A stretch of 60,230 nt of DNA, filler included, from Dugesia japonica (Eukaryota): NCBI GenBank assembly GCA_001938525.1. It is 5 parts of 5 records of this genome, joined end to end, with 100 filler letters (N's around TTAATTAATTAA, not from the genome) between each part and the next. Parts side by side here need not be neighbours in the genome. Positions count along the whole stretch, not along the records: positions 49,170 to 60,230 come from MQRL01627255.1; 4 more parts are not named here. One strand, 5' to 3'. Under the pieces are notes generated by a model. It was given only the letters and a program-made list of their open reading frames with translations, did not search any database and was not told the DNA's origin. Below, one piece after another: positions 48,496 through 60,230 of the stretch. A program made the position numbers and the translations under genes. Every line of letters starts with the position of its first letter. Position 1 is the first letter of the stretch.

Positions 48496-49344
48496 TTATG
48501 ATTAAATTTTACAGCACTAAAGAAAAAAATTACTCTTTGCAAATGTATTCTAAGATTCTGCCATTGATACATGAGTGTTGAAAAGTATGATAGAATTTTG
48601 CCAATTGTAAGATTTAGAAACGTGGTAAATAAATTTGAAAGAGTGTTAATATTACTGCATTTGGATTATATAATTCCAAAGTCAGATTGCAGGAACGTAT
48701 AACATTATTGGCCCACCAATCATTACCAGGAGTTACATCAAATCTTTTCTCCTTGACCAATCACCTCACCAGCTTTTTTTACTTTCACCGCAGTAATTGT
48801 GTCATCAAATTCTCTGTTTTCTCCCTCTTCTTTATGTGGTTTGAGTGACAGCGATTTTGGTTTACCAAATTTATGTTGTCCCTACGGTAAATTCTTTGTT
48901 GATAATAAGATTAATTCACATTTTGTTTCATATTTTAGATTTGGTTTTTTCAAAATCAATTTGTGTCTAAATCTGAGTCTATTCGAATGGATTAAGATAA
49001 TTGTTAAGTAATAATAAGAGAGAGAGATAAGTAATGATATCAAAAATGTGTATTTCACAACAATGCTATNNNNNNNNNNNNNNNNNNNNNNNNNNNNNNN
49101 NNNNNNNNNNNNNTTAATTAATTAANNNNNNNNNNNNNNNNNNNNNNNNNNNNNNNNNNNNNNNNNNNNTATAGGCATATAATTCCATAAAGATAGAAAT
49201 AAAATCCTAATAATAAAAATATTTGTTAAATAAAATTTCGATGAAAAATTTTGATTTGAAAACAATATATTTTATTTTAATATTTACGAGTTTCAAATTA
49301 GAATTTCAAGTTATTAAAGGAAAACAATAAAATAAATAATTTTA

Positions 49345-51607
49345 TTAAAATAAATTTGTTATTTGAATTTCTTCAATTATTTTACTTCCTTCAACTGTAT
49401 ATTTATTTTTAACTGGTCCAATACTTTTTGGAATTTTATTTGGAATACGTTTTACCCATTTGGGACCACCATATTTATAGATTATTTCTGAAACTCTGTC
49501 TTCCACCATTCTTGTAAGAAAATCATCAGGTATAAAAAATCGTAAGTATTTCAATCTTTCGCATACAGCAAAATCAATTGGCCATCTCCATAGGTCATAA
49601 AATGGACATAAATTCATTCCACTTACAAATGACGATGTTAAAATCCATAATTTCAGTTTAAAACTATCATGAATATCCATTCTTTCAAAGTTTTTATATC
49701 GCCGAAATATCTGAGCATATAATTCCCAACCAAAACTATTCCGTAATTGAGCATAGACCCCTAAGGCCAAATCTCGAATTGTTTCCCATTCTGAAAAGTA
49801 TCCATAATTAAGATAAGTTACCATAGTTCTAACAATAAGTCTAGATTTCAACCATCCTTCTGAAGGAGACCACGAACTTTTATTCGTCACGGATTCAATA
49901 CCTACTAGTGTAAATATGTTATTTGTTACTTCTTCAGTCCCTCTAAATGTAAACAAGTTGTCTTGTAAATTATGTCCAATCTCATGAAGTATAGCCCATG
50001 CATCATTGGTTTCAATAGAGTTTTTATTAAAGATATGAAACCCTTCATGATCTGTTACGTCGGGTATCTTTGTAGCAATCGGGTATCCAGAATGCATATA
50101 TCCTTTTTCAATTTGTATATCTGTAGATATTACCTCTCTACGACTTTGACTTACTGATTTTCCTTTAAGATGAAATAGTTCTTTCACCACTGAATCATAC
50201 AATGTTAATATTTTATCTGGTTCTGCTAAATTGCGAACTGCGTGTGATGATACTATAAACACGAGTGCATCACCAGCCAGAATCACCCATGGAGAAANNN
50301 NNNNNNNNNNNNNNNNNNNNNNNNNNNNNNNNNNNNNNNNNNNNNNNNNNNNNNNNNNNNNNNNNNNNNNNNNNNNNNNNNNNNNNNNNNNNNNGTCGTC
50401 ATATTGCTGACATTGTATTGATATTAAACCACCAAAAGGAAAAGAAAACCTTTTCAAAATATTTGGATAAATGTAAAATTTAGTGGAGGCTGATGGCCAT
50501 TTTTTCCATTCAGTCAATTTGTCAACAGAAAATAATTGAAAATTTAAATGAATAGTACATTGCTTTGACATTGAATAAGTAATTTNNNNNNNNNNNNNNN
50601 NNNNNNNNNNNNNNNNNNNNNNNNNNNNNNNNNNNNNNNNNNNNNNNNNNNNNNNNNNNNNNNNNNNNNNNNNNNNNNNNNNNNNNNNNNNNNNNNNNNN
50701 NNNNNNNNNNNNNNNNNNNNNNNNNNNNNNNNNNNNNNNNNNNNNNNNNNNNNNNNNNNNNNNNNNNNNNNNNNNNNNNNNNNNNNNNNNNNNNNNNNNN
50801 NNNNNNNNNNNNNNNATTAGTTAATGGTTTGTTCAGACATGGTATTAGTTGCTTAAAAAATGGTAAGTAAATAAGATAAAAGGATTGAACATTCATAAAT
50901 ACTCTTTCATAATTATTTATATTGGCTAAATATTGAAATGGTACATTTAATAAAATAGTTTTAATGGTGTCTGCAACAGATATTGCATTTGATATACTCA
51001 CTGTAGCATAACCTATCAAATGAACGAGGGGAAATGTGTGGATTTCTTCTTTTTTAGTTACATGTATTTCCGTACGTACTTGCTCAACTGATGGCCATAT
51101 TCCTAATGCAAAAAATAAAACTTGCAATTCACTATCCTCAATTTTCCTAGGATAATCCCACAAAGTTATTTCCATTATTATTCTTAATCCAGCTTTTATT
51201 AAGTTTAGTAAGACGTCAATTCCTTGTTTTCCAATTTCATCAACAGCATTCCATATGACCGGCGTAGAAACATCATTTTTGGTTTCCCAGTTTGATTTCA
51301 ATGTTTTTAGAAACTCAACAGTTAACTTTTGAGGACGTACTTTCCAGAATTTAAATACTTGCTGAAATAAATCTGCTAGATCTGTATAATCCTTTAGTGG
51401 TTCACCGGATTCATCAAAAAGATGTATTTGGGAATGTAAAAATGCAACGCAACCTTTTCCAACAGTAGAAATTGTTGCCATTACTTTATTTTCTTGAGTA
51501 ATGGCATACGGAATAACATTATCATTTAACAGATAAAAGTAACCAAAATGTAATTCTATTGAAAATGTTGAAATTAGTTTATCTTTTCTGGCTAAAAAGT
51601 TTCTGAT
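49345..51607 (-). CDS. TCAF/FAM115-like M60 (PF13402) zinc metallopeptidase
   Basis: DIQIEKGYMHSGYPI, WAILHEIGHNLQ..GTEEVTNNIF (HExxH..E), YAQLRNSFGWE, NLCPFYDLWRWP. N-terminal PYAITQENKVMATISTVGKG is like TCAF. AG acceptor before 51607 (phase 0). Two N gaps internally. Confidence 0.9.
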
Positions 51608-52276
51608 CTAAATAACAATAAAATGAAAATTTATTTGATTAAAATATTATTAAAAATTAATACATTTATTAAACATAATTAGTGATAAATTATACATAAC
51701 ATCTCGTGTATAACGCACGTTATATAAGAGTAAGAAACCATTTATTTAAAAATCTAGAATGCGCATTAAACACGGGATTTTAGTGTAAACAATTTCAATA
51801 CTTAATTCTTAATCTTAAAAATTAATAATAAAATAAAATAAAAAATTTCAATTTGTTAAAATATTTTTACACTAAAACTCTTTATCAATAACTTTTATGT
51901 TTTTAGCCTTTTTACAATTTTTCCAATTTTATTTAATTCTGATTTAGTTGAAACTATTTCTTGTATAATAAAATTGGCAAGTTTTATGATAACAAGTATA
52001 TACTACACTAGAGGTTTTCAATCTTTTATAGCGGGTAAAACTATTTATACTCTTCACAAATGTGGAGCTCGTTTATTAAAATAAGTTATAAATAATAGAT
52101 ATATTATTGCATACTCATTTGAAAATCTATTACAAACTGAAACAAATCAATGTATAACTTAAGAAACATAAATTTGTTTAGAAATTATACAATTTCACGG
52201 AGCCCTTGTAACTCTTCCAAGGCGCCCTTGAGCTCCGCAGATCACGCGTTATATTATCAAACGAAATATTATAGAT

Positions 52277-53950
52277 CAGGGGTAAACAAAATTTTTATGA
52301 GAAGGGCCAAATTTAGGCTGAGAATGTGAAATAAATTATATTAAAAAAACTTCAAATTAATTTTTAATTTTATTAATGAGATTTATGAAACTGATTGCAT
52401 AATTTTTTAAAATTATAATCAGGTACTAGATTGCTAGTTGAAATGCGTAAAATTGATTTTAAATTAGAATCAGTAATGAGTGACCGATTTTTTGACTTAT
52501 TAATATTCATGCTTGAAAATGTTTGTTCACAAATGTAAGTTGACCCAAAAAAAGGAAAAAATTCTTGATACAAAATTACACAAATTTGCCGCATCTAGTT
52601 TAGAATAAAATTCAATTAGACTGGCTTCTTTAAAATGCGCTCTAATCGAATTGTCACTTTGAAGATCAGTAATTTTCATTTGAAGACATTCATCAACGGT
52701 TTACTGAAAAAGGATAACAAATAATATTTTAACTTTATTCAAATGCTGTAAAATCGCTGAATCTTTTAGAAAATTCATCATAAAGTTGTAATATTATTAA
52801 TTTATATTGATTATTTTTATCCAAAGGTACTTATTGGGTTTTTAGCGCTACAAAATGAATATAGTTATGTTCACTAATTTGTCTAGCAAACAACTTTAGT
52901 TTATTTTGAAAATCTTTTACTGCAGTATAAAGTTCAATTTTATAATTACAATTATTGTGAGAATAATTGTTGGACATAACCATTGATCGGATTTGAGATT
53001 TCATTANNNNNNNNNNNNNNNNNNNNNNNNNNNNNNNNNNNNNNNNNNNNNNNNNNAAAATTTATTTGTAAAAAAAGTTCAAATTTTGTTTTGTTTTGAT
53101 CGAAGCCTTATCTTATTTTAATGAAATAAAGTTCAAATATGAAAAGCTCTTTTCCTTGTAAAGTATTTGTTAGTTGAGTTTGGAAAACTCGTCGTATTAT
53201 CAATATCAAAATTCGAATTCATTATGACACTTTATTAAAATCAAAACTGTAATTAACATTATTTGTTAATCAAGCAAATTAAAATCATGTGTTTTAATTG
53301 GTGTTCATTTTTCTAAAATTTAAAAATTGAAACTTTTATTTATTAAAATTATTTTTAACATTTTACTTGTATTCAGAATCAATATTTTCGAGAAATGAGC
53401 AAAATTGATGATTAAAAAATCTCAAAAAATTAATTAGATTTGTAATTGGATTAATATCATCTTTAAATTTTAAAATAGATTTACACAAACTTTCTTGATG
53501 AATGATACAACGAAAAGAAGACACGAAAAGGATAATTTTTTTAGCTTCATCGTTTACGAGACTCGCCAGATCGGAATTTTGGCCAATCGTTGAGGGGGCA
53601 CCATCCGTCGTAATATTAGCCAATTTATTAAATGGTAAATCAAACTATTTAAGGGAATTTTCAAGGCAAACAAACAAATTTCTGCTAGTTGTTTTTTTTT
53701 CATTGGTTCAATTGATAATATATCTTCAATCATTTCAAAATCTGGATTGATACCTCTTTTAAATAACAAAAGCAGTGCAGTATCATGAATATCGGTACTT
53801 TCGTCGAATGCTAAAGAATACCAAACAAAATTTTGACAAAATTTATTGATCTGTTTCAATTGGTACTCAGCGATAACTTCAACTCGGCGCACCACAGTTC
53901 TTTTCGAATGAACTAGTTGGTTACCAAAATTAAACATTCCCAAATTATTT
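52277..53950 (-). mobile_element. hAT transposon (SPIN/Buster/GTF2IRD2-like), degenerate, intronic
   Basis: TIR-like CAGGGGTAAACAAA at 52277; YSLAFDESTD, ITTDGAPS, CIIHQESLC, FGSTYICEQTFSSM..KSKNRS. Confidence 0.9.
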
Positions 53951-54928
53951 GAACTATTAATTCTAAATTATAATTTTAGCAATTTGAATATTCTGATTTT
54001 ATTTCGAAAAAAATTTTCAATAAATTTTAATTTTGTTCAAGGAAACTTAAATTTACTTCATGTATAATAAATAAAAAAAATTTAATATTTCAAAATTCAA
54101 AATATATTTTCATCATATAGGTTTTGGTAATTTAATTTTTATTCAAATTATTTTCCGTTAATTAATTTTGAAACTTTTTAAAAACCGTAGTTAAAATAAA
54201 TTTAAAAATTTAACTCTTCAGTTAATCCTTTCTAACGCTAAACATAAATCGAAACTGTTTCCTAAAAAAGGTCATAACTGAAGAGGCCATTGTCTTAAAA
54301 TCTTATATAAAAATTGACTAATTCTAGAATAACGAACAATGCAAAAATTCCAATATTTCGAATATATTCTACATTTGTAAAATTAATTACATTATCAAAG
54401 ATGATTATACATTGCTCACCTTTTATTAAAATGTATTGTTAGACCTCGCGGCAATATTCTTGCGACCCATGTGACTATCAAAGTTCACTGATTTTGACAT
54501 GCTTAGTTTAATTCATTTTGCTAATTTTATTTATTAATAATTTGAATATTCTGATATTATTTCGAAAAAATATTGCAATACATTTTAATTTTGTTCCACG
54601 AAATTTAAATTTATTCCTAGTATAATATTCCTAGCTATTCCTCGAATTTCTATAAAAATAAATTTTATTTTGATCGAAGCCTTTTCTTTATTTTAATGAA
54701 ATCTCAAAAACGATCAATGGTTAAGTTAAACAATTGTTGCAATAATTGTAATTATAAAATGAAATTCTAATAAAATTACACGTGATTTTAAATAAAAAGT
54801 AATTTATTAATGTTAATTCTAAAGCATAAATAATTAAGTTTTTAATATTAATGTCCTAAATAATATTTCTATATCTTTCATGCATTTAAAACAATCTCTT
54901 TAGGGAATTAATTTATTAATAACTTTAC

Positions 54929-55975
54929 CTTTCCTTGATATTTCAAAAATTCTTCACTTAATTTTATTGTCGGCTTATAAACTGTTCCCGAATACGTTAT
55001 ATGAAAAGAGGAATGTCTTAAGGAAGAAATAAAAATTAAATATCTAAGGGGCTGACGACACCAATAGGTTAGAATAAATTGATCATATGACTTCGTACTT
55101 CTATACATTTCACAATNNNNNNNNNNNNNNNNNNNNNNNNNNNNNNNNNNNNNNNNNNNNNNNNNNNNNNNNNNNGTTTTACGGCGAACATCCCATTGCC
55201 ACAAAACTAAATTAATAATTTTACCAATGAAATAAAATCACTCATCTTTTAACCTATATGAACTGAGACCGTAACCATTAAACTTTGATATAATTCATTC
55301 AATGGTATGATTTTAGTGTATTTAAGATTAGATTTTAGAAAATCATAACCTCCAAAGAAGTCAACTTGACTGAATTCTAAAATGAATATATAAAATAACA
55401 AATACGTGAATATTAAATTAACTTTTATCACAATCTGGAACACGGCAAAAATCCCAACTATATGCATAGAAACACCATGGTGCTTGCATATTTTCTGGAT
55501 TTCGACATTTGTTACCAGCATAAAACCTACTTTTCTCTGGAAATAATTCATCCCTGTATACCCCTTTATCAACCCATGCTTTGCAAGCTTTTCCACGCAT
55601 TGTATAATTTATTGAACCCATATATTCTGTACCTTCATCTGATGTTTTGCACCAATGTCTTTCTTTAATGTCTTTTTGTTGTAATTTATGCTTATATATT
55701 TATAATCATACCTTTAACACAACTTGGAATGTTGCAATACTCCCACTCTAAAGTATTTTTATTAACAAAACACCATGGTCCTTTAGGAAATTGTGTTGGA
55801 TTTCTACAAAATACGATATCAGTGATAGCAGATTCGTCGTAATAATAGCTGTTAGATAGACGTAATCCATCTATATATGCTTTCTTCCAAGGAATGCATG
55901 ATTTACCATTATAGGTTTTGCTTACTGTTCCAATATATTCGCTACCATGACTTGTGATTCTGCATTTTTCAATTT
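54929..55975 (-). CDS. Two tandem kringle domains plus linker exons (probably the 5' part of the M60 gene)
   Basis: Exons 55975-55712 (CRITSHGSEYIG..GKSCIPW..FCRNP..GPWCF..WEYCNIPSC), 55671-55423 (CKT..GTEYMG..CKAW..NKCRNP..APWCF..WDFCRVPDC), 55376-55254 and 55206-54929. Introns are 40-47 bp, phase 1; the last donor is phase 0. Confidence 0.88.
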
Positions 55976-56069
55976 CTAAATTAAAAAAATGAATTTGTTA
56001 AATCTCAATAAAAATATTTTAAAAGGTTTTTAAAGAAATTGATGTAAATATTAGGATTAAAAAAAGAAA

Positions 56070-57425
56070 ATTCAATTTCTAGGAGTAGAAACCATAAATA
56101 AATAGTACATAAGATGCACACCTAACCAGTGATGACTAAAGATAGAACACAGACGATGGGGCCAAAACCAACAAAAGCGATGAAATATTTAGCAAGTTGT
56201 TATTTTAATTATATGGGATTTTCCAGATTTTAGGGATAAGAAACTACAGAAGGAATAAATTATTGCAGTGAAATACATAAGGGTAAACGGTATTAATACC
56301 CGTTAAAAGACTAATGTCTAATTTGCAGCAAGTCTGGCTATTCTTTTAAATCTTGTGCAAAGTGATAGCGTTGATCTGGCCGCAGTAACACTAAACTTCT
56401 GTATATTCAGGAATAATTAAATGATGCAAATTAAAAGACAACAGCGTAACAGATTATGATGTAGTAATGATAAAAAACCGGAACGACTCCATTGCTTTTA
56501 TTTCATAGATGGAGTAAATATAAAACAAGGTTAAATAAATTAAAGTGGTGATGAAAGAAGAGAATTGTTTGAAAGAAAAGATGCAGAAGAGTGGAGAAAA
56601 GTATACTTTAATCGAGTAAAGTAAAAAATGTTGCGAGATTAAGGAACTTTTGTGATATACGAGTGAAAATTATTAGAATAGAATTGAAAAACTGTTGTTC
56701 TCAGCGCGCAATATCAGATAAAATGAAATATTTAATAATAGCGTAGAAAACCCTAAAAATAGTATTTCAATATTCCATGGAAGATCAGATGTACATTTTA
56801 GATTTTTGGTACTAGTTTTGTGATAATTTCAATGCAAAGAAGAAAAGAAAATTGTATTGGCAAATGAATCCAGATATTTGACAGCTCATGATAAAATGTA
56901 TTGGAAATTGAATTCCAGTAAAAACAGATCACAAAGCTTGGGTATTTTTGAACTATACAAAGAAACTGATTAATCCACAAATCCAGATGTGTATGGTAAA
57001 TTTAAGAGTTTATGATTTTTATCTCAAGTATAGAAAATGCAAAGAACCCACCAATGCGGATGAGTTGCCGAGGTTTAAGAAGAGTTTATGTTTACAATGC
57101 AGTATGAAACACGTGTACGCAAAAGAAGCAAAAACAAGATTATAGAATATCAATGGAATATAACATAAGACCGATAAATTTGCAATGATTGGACACGGCT
57201 CAAAAAAGGATTAAGAAATACAACACTGTGTAGCAATTTTGAGAGAGCAAGGTTAAGAGATTAAAAATAGTGAACATGGAAAGTACTGAAATAAACTGAA
57301 AATTAAATTTAAGATAGTGGATTATTTATTAGTAGTGGAAAGAAGAAATAAATTATTGTTAGTGGTTCCGACAAGCATACTTGATAAAGTGAAAAAGGAA
57401 ATTCATGAAGATTTATTTCATTTAA
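56070..57425 (+). mobile_element. Highly degenerate Gypsy pol fragment
   Basis: FLGV.., YMGFSRF, YRKCKEPTNADELPR..CLQC, LLVVP..EIHEDLFH. Confidence 0.6.
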
Positions 57426-57429
57426 AGAA

Positions 57430-57800
57430 GAATAACAACGTCAAAGGGTATATTCCAATATGATTATGCGAACAGTCTTTTCAAGGTTTACTTAATACAA
57501 CAGAAATGCCACCAAAATGGAATGAAATAACGGATGAAGATTATGAGAAGGCGTTGGAAATGTAGAGAACTACTGATCGCAAGATGCTTCTGGATTATAT
57601 GATGATTTATTTAAAGCTGGACATATTTTTATTGGCAGATTTCTTCCAACAGTTCAGAATCAAATCAATTTCACACAACAAATTGAAGCCATTGAATTTC
57701 TTTGGCTTACGAGCCAAGAGTTGGGCATTAGTCTTGATGTCACTAAATTAACAGGTAGAACAGTTGATGGACAACGATATATTCTTCTTTGTTGAAGGTG
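57430..57800 (+). pseudogene. pPolB exonuclease-III fragment (different subfamily)
   Basis: KGIFQYDY..ITDEDYEKA..LDYMMIYLKLDIFLLADFFQQFR..SW..DIFFFVEG. Confidence 0.8.
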
Positions 57801-58017
57801 AGTAGTTGTTAAATGGGATGAATGACACCTATAGCATTTTTTTGGATTTTTTCACCAAAATGACTGTTTTGGCGAGTTTTTTGTCATTAATGAGAAAAAT
57901 TCCATTATTCAAATGAATTAGTTAATTTTAATAAATAAAATAAATGGAATCATGCAAAAACGTCGAAAAAATTCAAAAAAACGCTACAAGTGCTATCCAT
58001 CCCATTTAACAACTACT
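57801..58017. mobile_element. 217-bp hairpin mini-element with AGTAGT...ACTACT ends
   Basis: AGTAGTTGTTAAATGGGATG ... CATCCCATTTAACAACTACT, with imperfect pairing over about 55 bp. No TSD. Confidence 0.75.
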
Positions 58018-58309
58018 ACACTTTTTCAAATCAGAATTTGTACTTTTTCAAATCAGAATTTGTACTTTAATAAATGACATTGTTTTCAATAAATTAGATA
58101 AATATTAATAAAAAGTTCCNAAAGAAGATAAATTCAAAAATTTGGAAAAACTAAAAAACGTTTTTTTGNAAANGTTTTTGTTATTTTAATAAAAAANTTN
58201 AAAAATAAACTTTTTTTTGAAACTTTTTTGATCTACGCCTAAGTTTATTTTCGTAATTTTGAAAATATTTAATTTTTTATTTCACTGATCAATGGTTAAA
58301 AATTTTAAA

Positions 58310-59847
58310 AACATTCTTTGCAAGAGGAATAAGTGGATGAATCTCAACGGTATTGGGAGATTAATATGTTAAAGCAAATAATAAATATACTAATATGCGA
58401 CAGATATAAAATATTAGATAAAATAGAACGTCAAGATGTATTAAATGATTTAAAAATAAATGGTAAGAAAACAACGAAACTTCAAGAGGCACTAAAATCT
58501 AATTATTTATTATATATCGATGCAAATAATTTATATGGACATTCAATGAGCCAACCTTTACCTTATAGTAATTTTGAACAAGCCACAAAAGAAGTAATCG
58601 ATTGTGTGAAACAAAATCCAATGGAAGGATTACAATTTATGTTTAATAAAGCAAAAGAAATACATAATAATGAGTTTAATGTTAGTTATGCTTTTAAAGT
58701 TGATTTACAATATAAAGATGATGAAGCGAAATTAGCTAATAGGAAATATTCATTAGCTCCAGAGAAAAGAAACATAGAAATAAATGAATTATTTAATTAT
58801 CAGAAAAATTTATTAAATCAATCCAAACAAAATTTTGTTGAGACAGAAAAATTAGTTTTAGATTTAAATCCAAAAACAAATTATTTTGTTTATTGGAAAA
58901 ATCTAGAATATTATCTTCAAAGAGGAATGGTTGTAACAAAAGTACATAAAATAGTTTCATTTTAAGAAAACCTTGGTTTAAAGATTATATAGATTATAAT
59001 ACAAGAAAAGAACTGTTGCCACAACTGATTTTGAGAAAGATTTGTGGAAATTAATGAATAACGGTTTTTTTGGTAAAACAATGGAGAATTTAAGACTAAG
59101 GCAAAATATAGAATTTGTTAATACACCAGAGTAATTTATAAAAAGAACTTCTAAACCAACTTTTAAAAGTTTAAAACAATTTGACGAAAATTTATTCGCT
59201 TGCCACTTCACGAAGAAACAAATACAAATGAATAAACCAATTTATATTGGATTTGTTATATTAGAATTATCGAAGTTACATATGTATAAAACTTTTTATG
59301 AGGAATTAAATCCTAAATTAGATATCACCTCATTATATACAGATACCAATTCTTGGGTGTTTAAAATTAATCGGATGATTTATATAGAGAAATAAGAGAG
59401 AAGAATTTAAAAGAAATATTTGACTTTAGTAATTATAAAAAAGATAGCGCCGTTGGGGGAGAATTAAAATTAACTCCTAAAGATTTGACTAAACATAAAA
59501 ATGTAATTGGTTATTTTACGGACGAGTTAGGAGGAAAATTAATGAAAGAATTTTGTGCTCTAAAATCAAAATCTTATTGTTTTATAAACGGGGATAATGA
59601 GGAGAAAAAGAAAAATAAAGNNNNNNNNNNNNNNNNNNNNNNNNNNNNNNNNNNNNNNNNNNNNNNNNNNNNNNNNNNNNNNNNNNNNNNNNTTCAATAT
59701 AATATTAATTATAGTATTAGATCGAAACTACATAATGTTTATGCAATAAAACAAAATAAAATATCTTTAAATCCATATGATGATAAAAGATATTATTACA
59801 ATAGTATAAATAATGGTCCATATTGTAATGGAATTTATTTAACATAA
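58310..59847 (+). pseudogene. pPolB polymerase domain, copy E, degenerate
   Basis: RGISG*IS; LYIDANNLYGHSMSQPLP; KLMNNGFFGKTMEN; NKPIYIGF; YTDTNS; ALKSKSY; KISLNPYDDKR. Confidence 0.92.
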
Positions 59848-60230
59848 ATATTAATTTAAATTTTCATTGAATACTAAAAAATGGATGAAAATTATTACAA
59901 TAAAGATAATAAAGATAATGAAAATTATTATATTTTAAATGAAGAAGAATTTCAAGATATAATAAATTATTCTAAAATAAATGCTTCAAAAACAACAAAG
60001 ATTCAAGAATACATAATTTTAAAGTCTTATGAAAATAGAGAAAGATTTTTATAAATAATGAGTTAAATTATAAAAATTATTTTTATAAATAAAAATGCCC
60101 GACCCAAATAAAAATACATTTAAAGAAATTTAAAATATTATTGCGTCAATATTTTTATTCCAACGAGATAAAAAATTTAAAAGTGTACCAAAAATGTTGG
60201 AATCTTTTACTTTAGAAACAGATTATGAAA

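What the first reader, a model, noticed from the sequence alone, without database searches (positions are those of the whole stretch)
49345..55975. Probable kringle-kringle-TCAF/M60 metallopeptidase fusion
Seen: the kringle exon chain ends at a phase-0 donor (KYQGK|gtaaag, 54929). The TCAF region begins at a phase-0 acceptor (tag|IRNFLARK, 51607) on the same strand. I recognised only transposon and repeat DNA in the 3.3 kb between. Established: animal TCAFs lack kringles; microbial M60-like enzymes are glycopeptidases/mucinases with binding modules; kringles are extracellular and usually partner serine proteases or receptors. Inference: a secreted, kringle-targeted HExxH mucinase-like enzyme, a candidate host-interaction factor if the organism is parasitic. 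I do not know this architecture from elsewhere. No signal-peptide exon was found.
Basis: partly seen in the sequence, partly recalled or inferred. Interest (0 to 1): 0.8.

Follow-up and report, generated by a model that had tools for sequence, protein, structure and literature searches.

The report
Kringle-fused TCAF/M60 metallopeptidase gene
An animal gene appears to join two kringle binding modules to a TCAF-type M60 zinc-peptidase body; only one other database protein shares this layout, I found no paper describing it, and no transcript yet proves the join.

Summary
On the minus strand lie, in order, two single-exon kringles (Pfam E 2e-17 and 2e-12), a 92-codon cysteine-bearing linker exon, and one 2.26-kb exon. 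That last exon encodes a complete TCAF-type body: an IMPa-like N-domain, M60-like_N, and Peptidase_M60 with intact HEIGH...E. Intron phases fit (1-1, 1-1, 1-0, then 0).

The closest of 1.84 billion representative proteins is P0001 (UniParc UPI0005FFB7D8, about 50% identical).

Exon 4 has no ATG before codon 43. Codons 22-36 are nearly identical to P0001, and codons 21-50 are the most confidently folded part of the N-domain. The exon therefore needs an upstream coding exon.

The three gaps in coding sequence match the homologue's missing segments in size.

The fusion is probable (about 0.7) but rests on one, probably predicted, homologue.

Corrections:
- Exon 3 starts at 55206 and runs through the 55117-55175 gap.
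- The kringles lack the lysine-binding acid pair.

No signal-peptide exon lies in the piece. Secretion, activity and the parasite idea remain inference.

The parts
55712..55975 (-). Kringle 1 exon (264 nt, intron phase 1 on both sides); six cysteines. The gene is open at its 5' end here: at least one upstream exon with the start codon is missing from the piece.
   Evidence: Pfam PF00051 E 2.4e-17; splice contexts ttaatttag| and AAG|gtatga; its end aligns to P0001 1-30.
55423..55662 (-). Kringle 2 exon (240 nt, phase 1-1); six cysteines. An alternative acceptor lies 9 nt upstream at 55671.
   Evidence: Pfam PF00051 E 1.7e-12; 44% identity to P0001 29-114; splice contexts.
55254..55376 (-). A possible cassette exon but unsupported; most likely intron.
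   Evidence: No counterpart in P0001; no Pfam hit; frame compatibility read.
54929..55206 (-). Exon 3: linker region of unknown fold (2 nt plus 92 codons, phase 1 to phase 0). It runs through the assembly gap 55117-55175 and has a conserved Cys-x18-Cys pair. It ends at donor AAG|gtaaag.
   Evidence: tblastn to P0001 117-208, 31% identity, E 3e-12; the gap is 21 codons against 21 residues in P0001; GC 32% like the other exons against 18-24% in the introns; no Pfam, PDB or N-domain similarity.
51608..54928 (-). Intron 3 (3321 nt), filled with decayed transposon and repeat DNA; contains gap 53007-53056.
   Evidence: Inverted repeats 52928-53006 / 54694-54769 and direct repeats; hAT-like motifs (DESTD, TDGAP, C-terminal CEQTFS) seen by eye in the ORFs with no Pfam support; no ATG...GTRAG phase-0 mini-exon.
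50816..51607 (-). Exon 4, first part: TCAF N-terminal alpha/beta domain (IMPa-N-like). The frame opens at the acceptor; the first ATG is at 51479-51481 (codon 43).
   Evidence: 37% identity to P0001 209-469; alignment to 19 TCAF homologues; AF2 pLDDT 82, pTM 0.81; Foldseek match to IMPa 5kdw/7jtv, E 2.4e-5.
50395..50583 (-). Exon 4, middle: C-terminal half of the M60-like_N beta domain, between gaps 50586-50815 and 50298-50394.
   Evidence: Pfam PF17291 E 0.003, below cut-off; aligns to P0001 542-604 and P0002.
49345..50297 (-). Exon 4, last part: Peptidase_M60 catalytic domain and C-terminal tail, with stop codon 49345-49347. HEIGH is at 49972-49986. The glutamates of EEVTNN are at 49930-49935, the first 13 residues after the second His.
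   Evidence: Pfam PF13402 E 3.6e-36; PDB profile hits 4fca, 5kd5 (BT4244), 7sci, ZmpA/B/C, with the motif aligned to HEVGH...GEVT; coordinates.

Best explanation
This is one 5'-incomplete, multi-exon animal gene on the minus strand. Its product carries at least two kringle modules, a roughly 95-residue cysteine-bearing linker, and a complete TCAF-homologue body. That body consists of an IMPa-like N-domain, an M60-like_N beta domain and an M60 gluzincin domain.

Shown:
- the domains and their order;
- compatible intron phases;
- an intact HExxH plus downstream Glu;
- the same order and the same junction in the closest known relative;
- no usable start codon in the TCAF exon.

Inferred:
- Exons 3 and 4 are spliced across the 3.3-kb transposon-filled intron.
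- The product enters the secretory pathway, because kringles need three disulfides each.
- It acts outside the cell as a zinc peptidase of the M60/IMPa type. Solved members of that type cut O-glycosylated, mucin-like proteins next to the glycosylated Ser/Thr.
- The kringles serve as protein-binding anchors, not as classical lysine binders.

The likely origin is exon shuffling: phase-1 kringle exons were placed upstream of a single-exon TCAF-like gene, which then lost its own start codon.
For: - Domains: Pfam hits.
- Closest relative: P0001 (919 aa, 47-58% identical by part) is kringle (partial), kringle, linker, TCAF N-domain, M60_N, M60. It maps colinearly onto 55802-49348.
- Junction: P0001's ...QYQNK|IKL... 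aligns with ...KYQGK|IRN..., with 21 residues on both sides to the conserved GYFYLL.
- Exon 3 is conserved up to the donor (E 3e-12).
- Exon 4 opens right at the acceptor. Its first ATG is codon 43, yet codons 22-36 match P0001 in 14 of 15 places. AF2 gives blocks 21-50 a pLDDT of 90-92 and places strands 24-26 and 31-37 there.
- Canonical TCAF homologues start with their Met a few residues upstream of where exon 4 begins.
- No ATG-to-good-donor mini-exon exists in intron 3.
- Exon GC is 31-36% against 18-24% in the introns.
- The catalytic motif aligns to solved M60 O-glycopeptidases, and the N-domain fold matches IMPa.
Against: - No transcript or EST spans the junction: nothing in the protein collection and no spliced-junction match in metagenome contigs.
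- P0001 is a single, N-terminally cut UniParc entry of unknown species. It lacks about 33-35 residues inside the M60 domain just before HExxH. It therefore looks like an automatic gene model, which could itself merge two neighbouring genes.
- P0001 has a Met 17 residues into its exon-4 equivalent, and P0002 has a Met at the very start, so relatives could be stand-alone genes.
- The acceptor AG is simply part of the in-frame TAG that opens the ORF, so it is weak evidence on its own.
- Animal M60-like/TCAF proteins are reported without signal peptides (PMC3267712). Fusion to disulfide-rich kringles would need a change of cellular compartment.
- No signal exon was found.
- AF2 gave no confident fold for the linker.
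Confidence: 0.68

Rival explanations
1. There are two neighbouring genes on the same strand. The first is a small kringle-kringle-linker gene ending at the TAA at 54908-54910, six codons past the proposed donor. The second is a separate single-exon TCAF-homologue gene, cytosolic like its relatives. On this reading P0001 is a chimeric automatic model.
For: - Canonical TCAF homologues are stand-alone, start with Met at the equivalent point and carry no kringle.
- P0002's ORF starts with ATG at the exon-4 start.
- P0001 has a model-like internal deletion.
- The read-through ...VKLLIN* resembles P0001's IKLILN.
- AATAAA lies at 54917 just after the stop, though 48 such sites occur in the piece.
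- Animal M60-like proteins lack signal peptides.
Against: - Exon 4 has no ATG before codon 43, and starting there removes two core strands that are 93% conserved with P0001 and folded at pLDDT 90 or more.
- No ATG...GTRAG phase-0 first exon lies in the 3.3 kb between.
- The phases match.
- The spliced junction reproduces P0001's spacing exactly.
- The same adjacency is kept in a relative that is only about 50% identical.
Confidence: 0.22
2. The fusion is real, but the product is not an enzyme. Like vertebrate TCAF1/2, the M60-like body would act as a binding or regulatory partner, here displayed extracellularly or in the secretory pathway, and the kringles would add further binding surfaces.
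For: - The only functionally studied animal members (TCAF1/2) are known as TRPM8 trafficking and gating partners, not as proteases (established knowledge: Gkika et al. 2015).
- 36% of vertebrate M60-like proteins have a degraded zincin motif (PMC3267712).
Against: - HEIGH and the downstream Glu are intact here, in P0001, in P0002 and in the mollusc homologues.
- This fits selection on catalysis.
Confidence: 0.25
3. The TCAF exon is a recently dead copy: a stand-alone gene that lost its start codon and happens to lie downstream of an unrelated kringle gene.
For: The canonical Met is missing, and the surroundings are full of decayed transposons.
Against: About 640 readable codons have no stop in roughly 30%-GC DNA. 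All conserved motifs are intact and identity to P0001 is 47-58%. The same arrangement occurs in P0001.
Confidence: 0.07

Closest known systems
P0001 = UniParc UPI0005FFB7D8 (919 aa, N-terminally partial, species and name not given by the source)
   Same: Same order: kringle, kringle, cysteine-bearing linker, TCAF N-domain, M60-like_N, Peptidase_M60. Same linker/TCAF junction and spacing. 47-58% identity in the M60 part, 37% in the N-domain, 31% in the linker, 44% in kringle 2.
   Different: It lacks about 33-35 residues just before HExxH, probably a model error. It has a Met 17 residues after the junction. It is uncharacterised, and its DNA was not retrievable.
Invertebrate 'TRPM8 channel-associated factor homolog' proteins (Lottia XP_009065661, Patella XP_050415374, Limulus XP_022249607, Mytilus XP_071162964) and vertebrate TCAF1/2
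   Same: Same body: N-terminal alpha/beta domain(s), M60-like_N and Peptidase_M60 with HExxH. 28-35% identity over the M60 part.
   Different: They have no kringles and no linker exon, and they start with their own Met. Animal members are reported without a signal peptide. Vertebrate TCAFs are known as intracellular TRPM8 partners (established knowledge).
Bacterial M60-like / IMPa O-glycopeptidases (BT4244 5kd5, IMPa 5kdw/7jtv, ZmpA/B/C, AM0627 7sci, BcM60)
   Same: The gluzincin motif HExxH...E aligns. The N-domain fold matches the IMPa N-terminal domain (Foldseek E 2.4e-5). These are secreted enzymes with accessory binding modules (PMC3267712).
   Different: The bacterial enzymes use carbohydrate-binding modules (CBM32, CBM5_12), not kringles. 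Sequence identity is low (E 4e-16 at best with a profile).
Kringle-bearing proteases of the plasminogen / HGF / tPA type
   Same: Phase-1-flanked kringle modules sit N-terminal to a protease domain. Six-cysteine kringles, 35-38% identical to fish plasminogen kringles.
   Different: The protease here is an M60 metallopeptidase, not an S1 serine protease. The acidic pair after CRNP is present in all five Silurus plasminogen kringles but absent in both kringles here.

Membership tests
Kringle domain (PF00051) | Pfam profile match above the gathering score | tested here: met
   63.5 and 47.9 bits against a cut-off of 34.3.
Kringle domain (PF00051) | Six conserved cysteines (three disulfides) and the CRNP...PWC core | tested here: met
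   Alignment with five Silurus plasminogen kringles.
Lysine-binding kringles (plasminogen K1/K4 type) | Acidic pair (D/E-x-D/E) directly after CRNP, forming the anionic centre | tested here: not met
   K1 has T-Q-F and K2 has E-N-M; all five plasminogen kringles have the pair. Which residues matter is taken from memory.
Peptidase M60-like (PF13402, gluzincin) | Pfam profile match above the gathering score | tested here: met
   125.6 bits against a cut-off of 25.8, E 3.6e-36; PDB M60 hits.
Peptidase M60-like (PF13402, gluzincin) | HEXXH followed by a Glu within 8-28 residues (zinc ligands and catalytic base) | tested here: met
   HEIGH at 49972-49986 with EE 13-14 residues after the second His. 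It aligns to HEVGH...GEVT of 4fca.
Peptidase M60-like (PF13402, gluzincin) | Metal-dependent cleavage of mucin or O-glycoprotein substrates | not testable with these tools
   Needs recombinant protein and an assay.
TCAF family (TRPM8 channel-associated factor homologues) | Architecture: N-terminal alpha/beta domain, M60-like_N, Peptidase_M60 | tested here: met
   The N-domain aligns to 19 homologues and folds at pLDDT 82. M60-like_N is weak because half of it is in a gap (E 0.003), but it is colinear with P0001 and P0002.
TCAF family (TRPM8 channel-associated factor homologues) | Stand-alone protein with its own start Met and no extracellular modules | tested here: not met
   No ATG before codon 43. 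Kringle and linker exons lie upstream in compatible phase.
TCAF family (TRPM8 channel-associated factor homologues) | Binding to and regulation of a TRPM8-type channel | not testable with these tools
   Functional assay needed.
Secreted protein | N-terminal signal peptide | tested here: inconclusive
   No ATG plus hydrophobic stretch plus phase-1 donor in 55976-60230. The 5' exon probably lies beyond the piece, and P0001 is also cut at its N-terminus.

The most novel reading that the evidence does not exclude
An animal has moved a normally intracellular TCAF-type M60/IMPa-like zinc peptidase into the secretory pathway by exon-shuffling kringle modules and a new cysteine-bearing linker onto it. 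The result would be an endogenous, kringle-anchored O-glycoprotein-cleaving (mucinase-like) enzyme, a domain combination I found in no paper.
Probability: 0.4. Interest if true: 0.6.

Novelty: new variant of a known kind. Interest (0 to 1): 0.45.

Why it matters
TCAF proteins are the animal branch of the M60-like peptidases, and their biochemical activity is still unknown. Vertebrate members are studied only as TRPM8 partners.

A lineage in which the intact HExxH body is fused to extracellular kringles would argue that at least some animal TCAF homologues are real, secreted enzymes. It would also give a natural construct in which to test O-glycoprotease activity.

It would further be a clean example of phase-1 exon shuffling that couples kringles to a metallopeptidase rather than to a serine protease.

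If the two parts turn out to be separate genes, the locus is ordinary.

Tried and rejected
1. Word-indexed protein searches:
- with P0001 whole: returned only P0001 itself and fish plasminogens;
- with P0001 115-919: returned only P0001 itself;
- with the window's N-domain: returned nothing.
The index is swamped for these low-complexity, AT-rich-encoded proteins, so these blanks say little.

2. DNA for P0001 is not on record, so its intron structure could not be checked.

3. The metagenome scan with an M60 alignment and an exact search for the spliced 54929|51607 junction found nothing.

4. AF2 of P0001 31-470 with a shallow alignment gave pLDDT below 50 for the kringle and most of the linker. 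It says nothing about the linker fold. One helix (P0001 200-216) spans the junction, with block pLDDT of 49-78.

5. The linker has no Pfam, PDB or N-domain-profile similarity. The idea that it is a relic of a second TCAF N-domain was rejected.

6. The transposon ORFs gave no significant Pfam, PHROG or PDB hit. The hAT and DNA-polymerase-B labels rest on motifs seen by eye.

7. Literature searches for kringle plus M60/TCAF and for the accession numbers found nothing relevant.

8. The organism could not be identified. It is an AT-rich metazoan with GT-AG introns as short as 49 nt. The parasite speculation could not be tested.
Full report
**What is there**

The piece 49170-60230 is AT-rich (about 25% GC) and looks like metazoan genomic DNA with GT-AG introns. 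Everything in the finding lies on the minus strand.

Pfam confirms the named domains:
- Kringle at 55720-55973 (E 2.4e-17) and at 55421-55687 (E 1.7e-12).
- Peptidase_M60 at 49348-50295 (E 3.6e-36).
- A sub-threshold M60-like_N at 50395-50583 (E 0.003), half of which is hidden by a gap.

**The closest relative**

I ran a full HMMER search with the M60 part (49348-50571) against 1.84 billion representative proteins. It gave 1305 hits.

P0001 is the best hit: 919 aa, E 7.6e-117, about 51% identical.
- It is a UniParc-only entry, UPI0005FFB7D8, with no name or species.
- It begins in the middle of a kringle.
- By Pfam it contains Kringle, M60-like_N and Peptidase_M60.

P0002 is the second hit: 756 aa, 42% identical, with no kringle. 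It comes from a 2.5-kb genomic-looking Logan contig.

Next come ordinary 'TRPM8 channel-associated factor homolog' proteins of molluscs and horseshoe crabs at 28-35% identity.

A phmmer scan of all 150 listed representatives with the two window kringles found kringles only in P0001. The architecture is therefore rare within the family but not unique to this window.

**Colinearity and the corrected gene model**

tblastn of P0001 against the piece and a three-way alignment show one colinear series:

| P0001 residues | Window region | Identity |
|---|---|---|
| 1-30 | end of kringle 1 | |
| 29-114 | kringle 2 | 44% |
| 117-208 | open frame from about 55201 to 54929 | 31%, E 3e-12 |
| 209-469 | 51607-50816 | 37% |
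| 542-918 | 50583-49348 | 47% |

From this I derive four exons:

| Exon | Coordinates | Length | Intron phase |
|---|---|---|---|
| K1 | 55975-55712 | 264 nt | 1-1 |
| K2 | 55662-55423 | 240 nt | 1-1 |
| E3 | 55206-54929 | 278 nt | 1-0 |
| E4 | 51607-49348, plus stop | 2260 nt | starts in phase 0 |

The introns are 49, 216 and 3321 nt. Exon GC is 31-36%, against 18-24% in the introns.

- Exon 3 starts at 55206 and runs through the gap 55117-55175.
It has no counterpart in P0001 and no family hit, so I treat it as intron.

**The gaps**

This test was required first. Read as written, gaps 55117-55175 and 50298-50394 keep the reading frame.

| Gap | Codons it stands for | Residues at the same place in P0001 |
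|---|---|---|
| 55117-55175 | 21 | 21 |
| 50298-50394 | about 33 | 33 |
| 50586-50815 (230 N) | about 77 | 72 |

Gap 50586-50815 shifts the frame by one base as written. Both of its flanks align in order to P0001 and P0002. The exon is therefore most simply continuous and the stated gap length is only approximate.

Gap 53007-53056 is intronic.

I did not fill any gap. In scripts the gaps were kept as X.

**Is the join 54929 to 51607 real?**

Evidence for:
1. P0001 carries the same junction. Its ...QYQNK|IKL... aligns with ...KYQGK|IRN..., and in both there are exactly 21 residues from the junction to the conserved GYFYLL motif.
2. Exon 3 is conserved right up to the donor.
3. Exon 4 has no ATG before codon 43. 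Codons 22-36 match P0001 in 14 of 15 positions. In an AlphaFold model of the N-domain (20-sequence alignment, pLDDT 82, pTM 0.81), blocks 21-50 have pLDDT 90-92 and strands 24-26 and 31-37 fall there. Translation from codon 43 would delete core strands.
4. In the alignment with 17 canonical TCAF homologues, their start Met lies a few residues upstream of the point where exon 4 opens. Here the canonical start has been lost.
5. No ATG-initiated frame in intron 3 ends at a GTRAG donor in phase 0.

Evidence against:
1. No transcript was found.
2. P0001 is one entry. It lacks about 33-35 residues just before HExxH, so it is probably an automatic model that might merge neighbours.
3. P0001 has a Met 17 residues after the junction. 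P0002 begins with Met directly after a ttttag, so stand-alone relatives are possible.
4. The acceptor AG is part of the TAG that opens the frame, which is weak evidence alone.
5. Six codons past the donor there is a stop (54908-54910). A short kringle-linker protein is therefore possible.

I put the fusion at about 0.7.

**What the parts are**

Both kringles have the six cysteines and the CRNP...PWC core. They lack the acidic pair after CRNP that all five kringles of Silurus plasminogen carry. That pair forms the anionic centre of the lysine-binding site (from memory). The kringles are therefore probably generic protein-binding modules.

The linker (exon 3) has a conserved Cys-x18-Cys pair. 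It shows no similarity to any Pfam family, PDB chain or the TCAF N-domain profile. AlphaFold gave no confident fold for it.

The first 264 residues of exon 4 fold into an alpha/beta domain. Its only significant PDB matches are the N-terminal part of IMPa, the secreted O-glycopeptidase of Pseudomonas aeruginosa (E 2.4e-5, probability 1.0, TM 0.41 on the query).

The catalytic domain aligns to solved M60 O-glycopeptidases (4fca, BT4244 5kd5, AM0627 7sci, ZmpA/B/C, BcM60). HEIGH (49972-49986) and the Glu of EEVTNN (49930-49935) are in register with HEVGH...GEVT.

**Likely mechanism**

If the fusion is real, the kringles imply passage through the ER. The product would then be a secreted or surface zinc peptidase of the IMPa/M60 type. 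It would probably cut O-glycosylated, mucin-like substrates, with kringles and linker as targeting modules.

This is inference. No signal-peptide exon lies in the 4.25 kb upstream, which is occupied by decayed mobile-element DNA. P0001 is also N-terminally cut. Nakjang et al. (PMC3267712) report animal M60-like proteins without signal peptides, and 36% of vertebrate ones with a degraded zincin motif.

The motif is intact here and in P0001, in P0002 and in the mollusc homologues, which favours activity.

**Comparison and novelty**

The body is a member of the TCAF/M60-like family. The kringle-plus-linker N-terminus is not a feature of that family. Kringles are otherwise known upstream of serine proteases, not metallopeptidases.

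I found no paper on such a combination. One unannotated database protein already shows it.

I rate it a new variant of a known kind, of moderate interest, conditional on transcript proof.

The 'parasite host-interaction factor' idea has no support. The organism could not be identified, and the nearest named relatives come from free-living animals.

Noticed in passing
window 58333-59844 (+), with a second partial copy from about 59880: Decayed ORFs on the plus strand carry motifs resembling protein-primed family-B DNA polymerases (YIDANNLYG; YTDTNS), as in Polinton/Maverick-type elements. An 83-nt stretch of the ORF start recurs at 59926-60008 (75% identity). Pfam, PHROGs and PDB gave no significant hit, so the label is by eye only.
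   Followed up: partly
window 57768-57853 and 57965-58050: An inverted repeat with 86-nt arms (76% complementary) around a 111-nt loop, looking like a MITE or foldback insertion. A short tandem duplication of about 22 nt lies next to it, near 58030-58075.
   Followed up: partly
window 52376-53967 (-), inside intron 3: Broken same-strand ORFs with hAT-transposase-like motifs (DESTD, TDGAP, and a C-terminal CEQTFS...R..L motif). They are partly enclosed by roughly 80-nt inverted repeats at 52928-53006 / 54694-54769, with direct repeats 53945-54069 / 54503-54627. There is no Pfam support.
   Followed up: partly
window 58130-58200: Several isolated single n letters (ambiguous base calls, not a gap) in a T/A-rich stretch.
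   Followed up: no
P0001 residues about 700-703: The closest homologue lacks about 33-35 residues just upstream of HExxH, including the conserved GYMHSGYP motif that the window and P0002 both have. This suggests a mis-predicted intron or a gap in its gene model.
   Followed up: partly
L001 1-160 (Logan SRR33002330 contig encoding P0002): The kringle-less relative's ORF also opens directly after a T-rich tract ending in ttttag, with the TAG in frame, followed at once by ATG. It could be a stand-alone start or an internal exon like the window's. The contig is too short to tell.
   Followed up: partly
L002 1-140 (ENA ERZ27257134 contig encoding P0010): A third relative of the M60 C-terminus (55% identical) sits on a metagenome contig whose frame is interrupted upstream of residue 1. 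This suggests an intron inside the M60 domain that the window's gene does not have.
   Followed up: no
window 55663-55711: The intron between the two kringle exons is only 49 nt (40 nt with the alternative acceptor), while intron 3 is 3.3 kb. The organism therefore tolerates very short introns.
   Followed up: no
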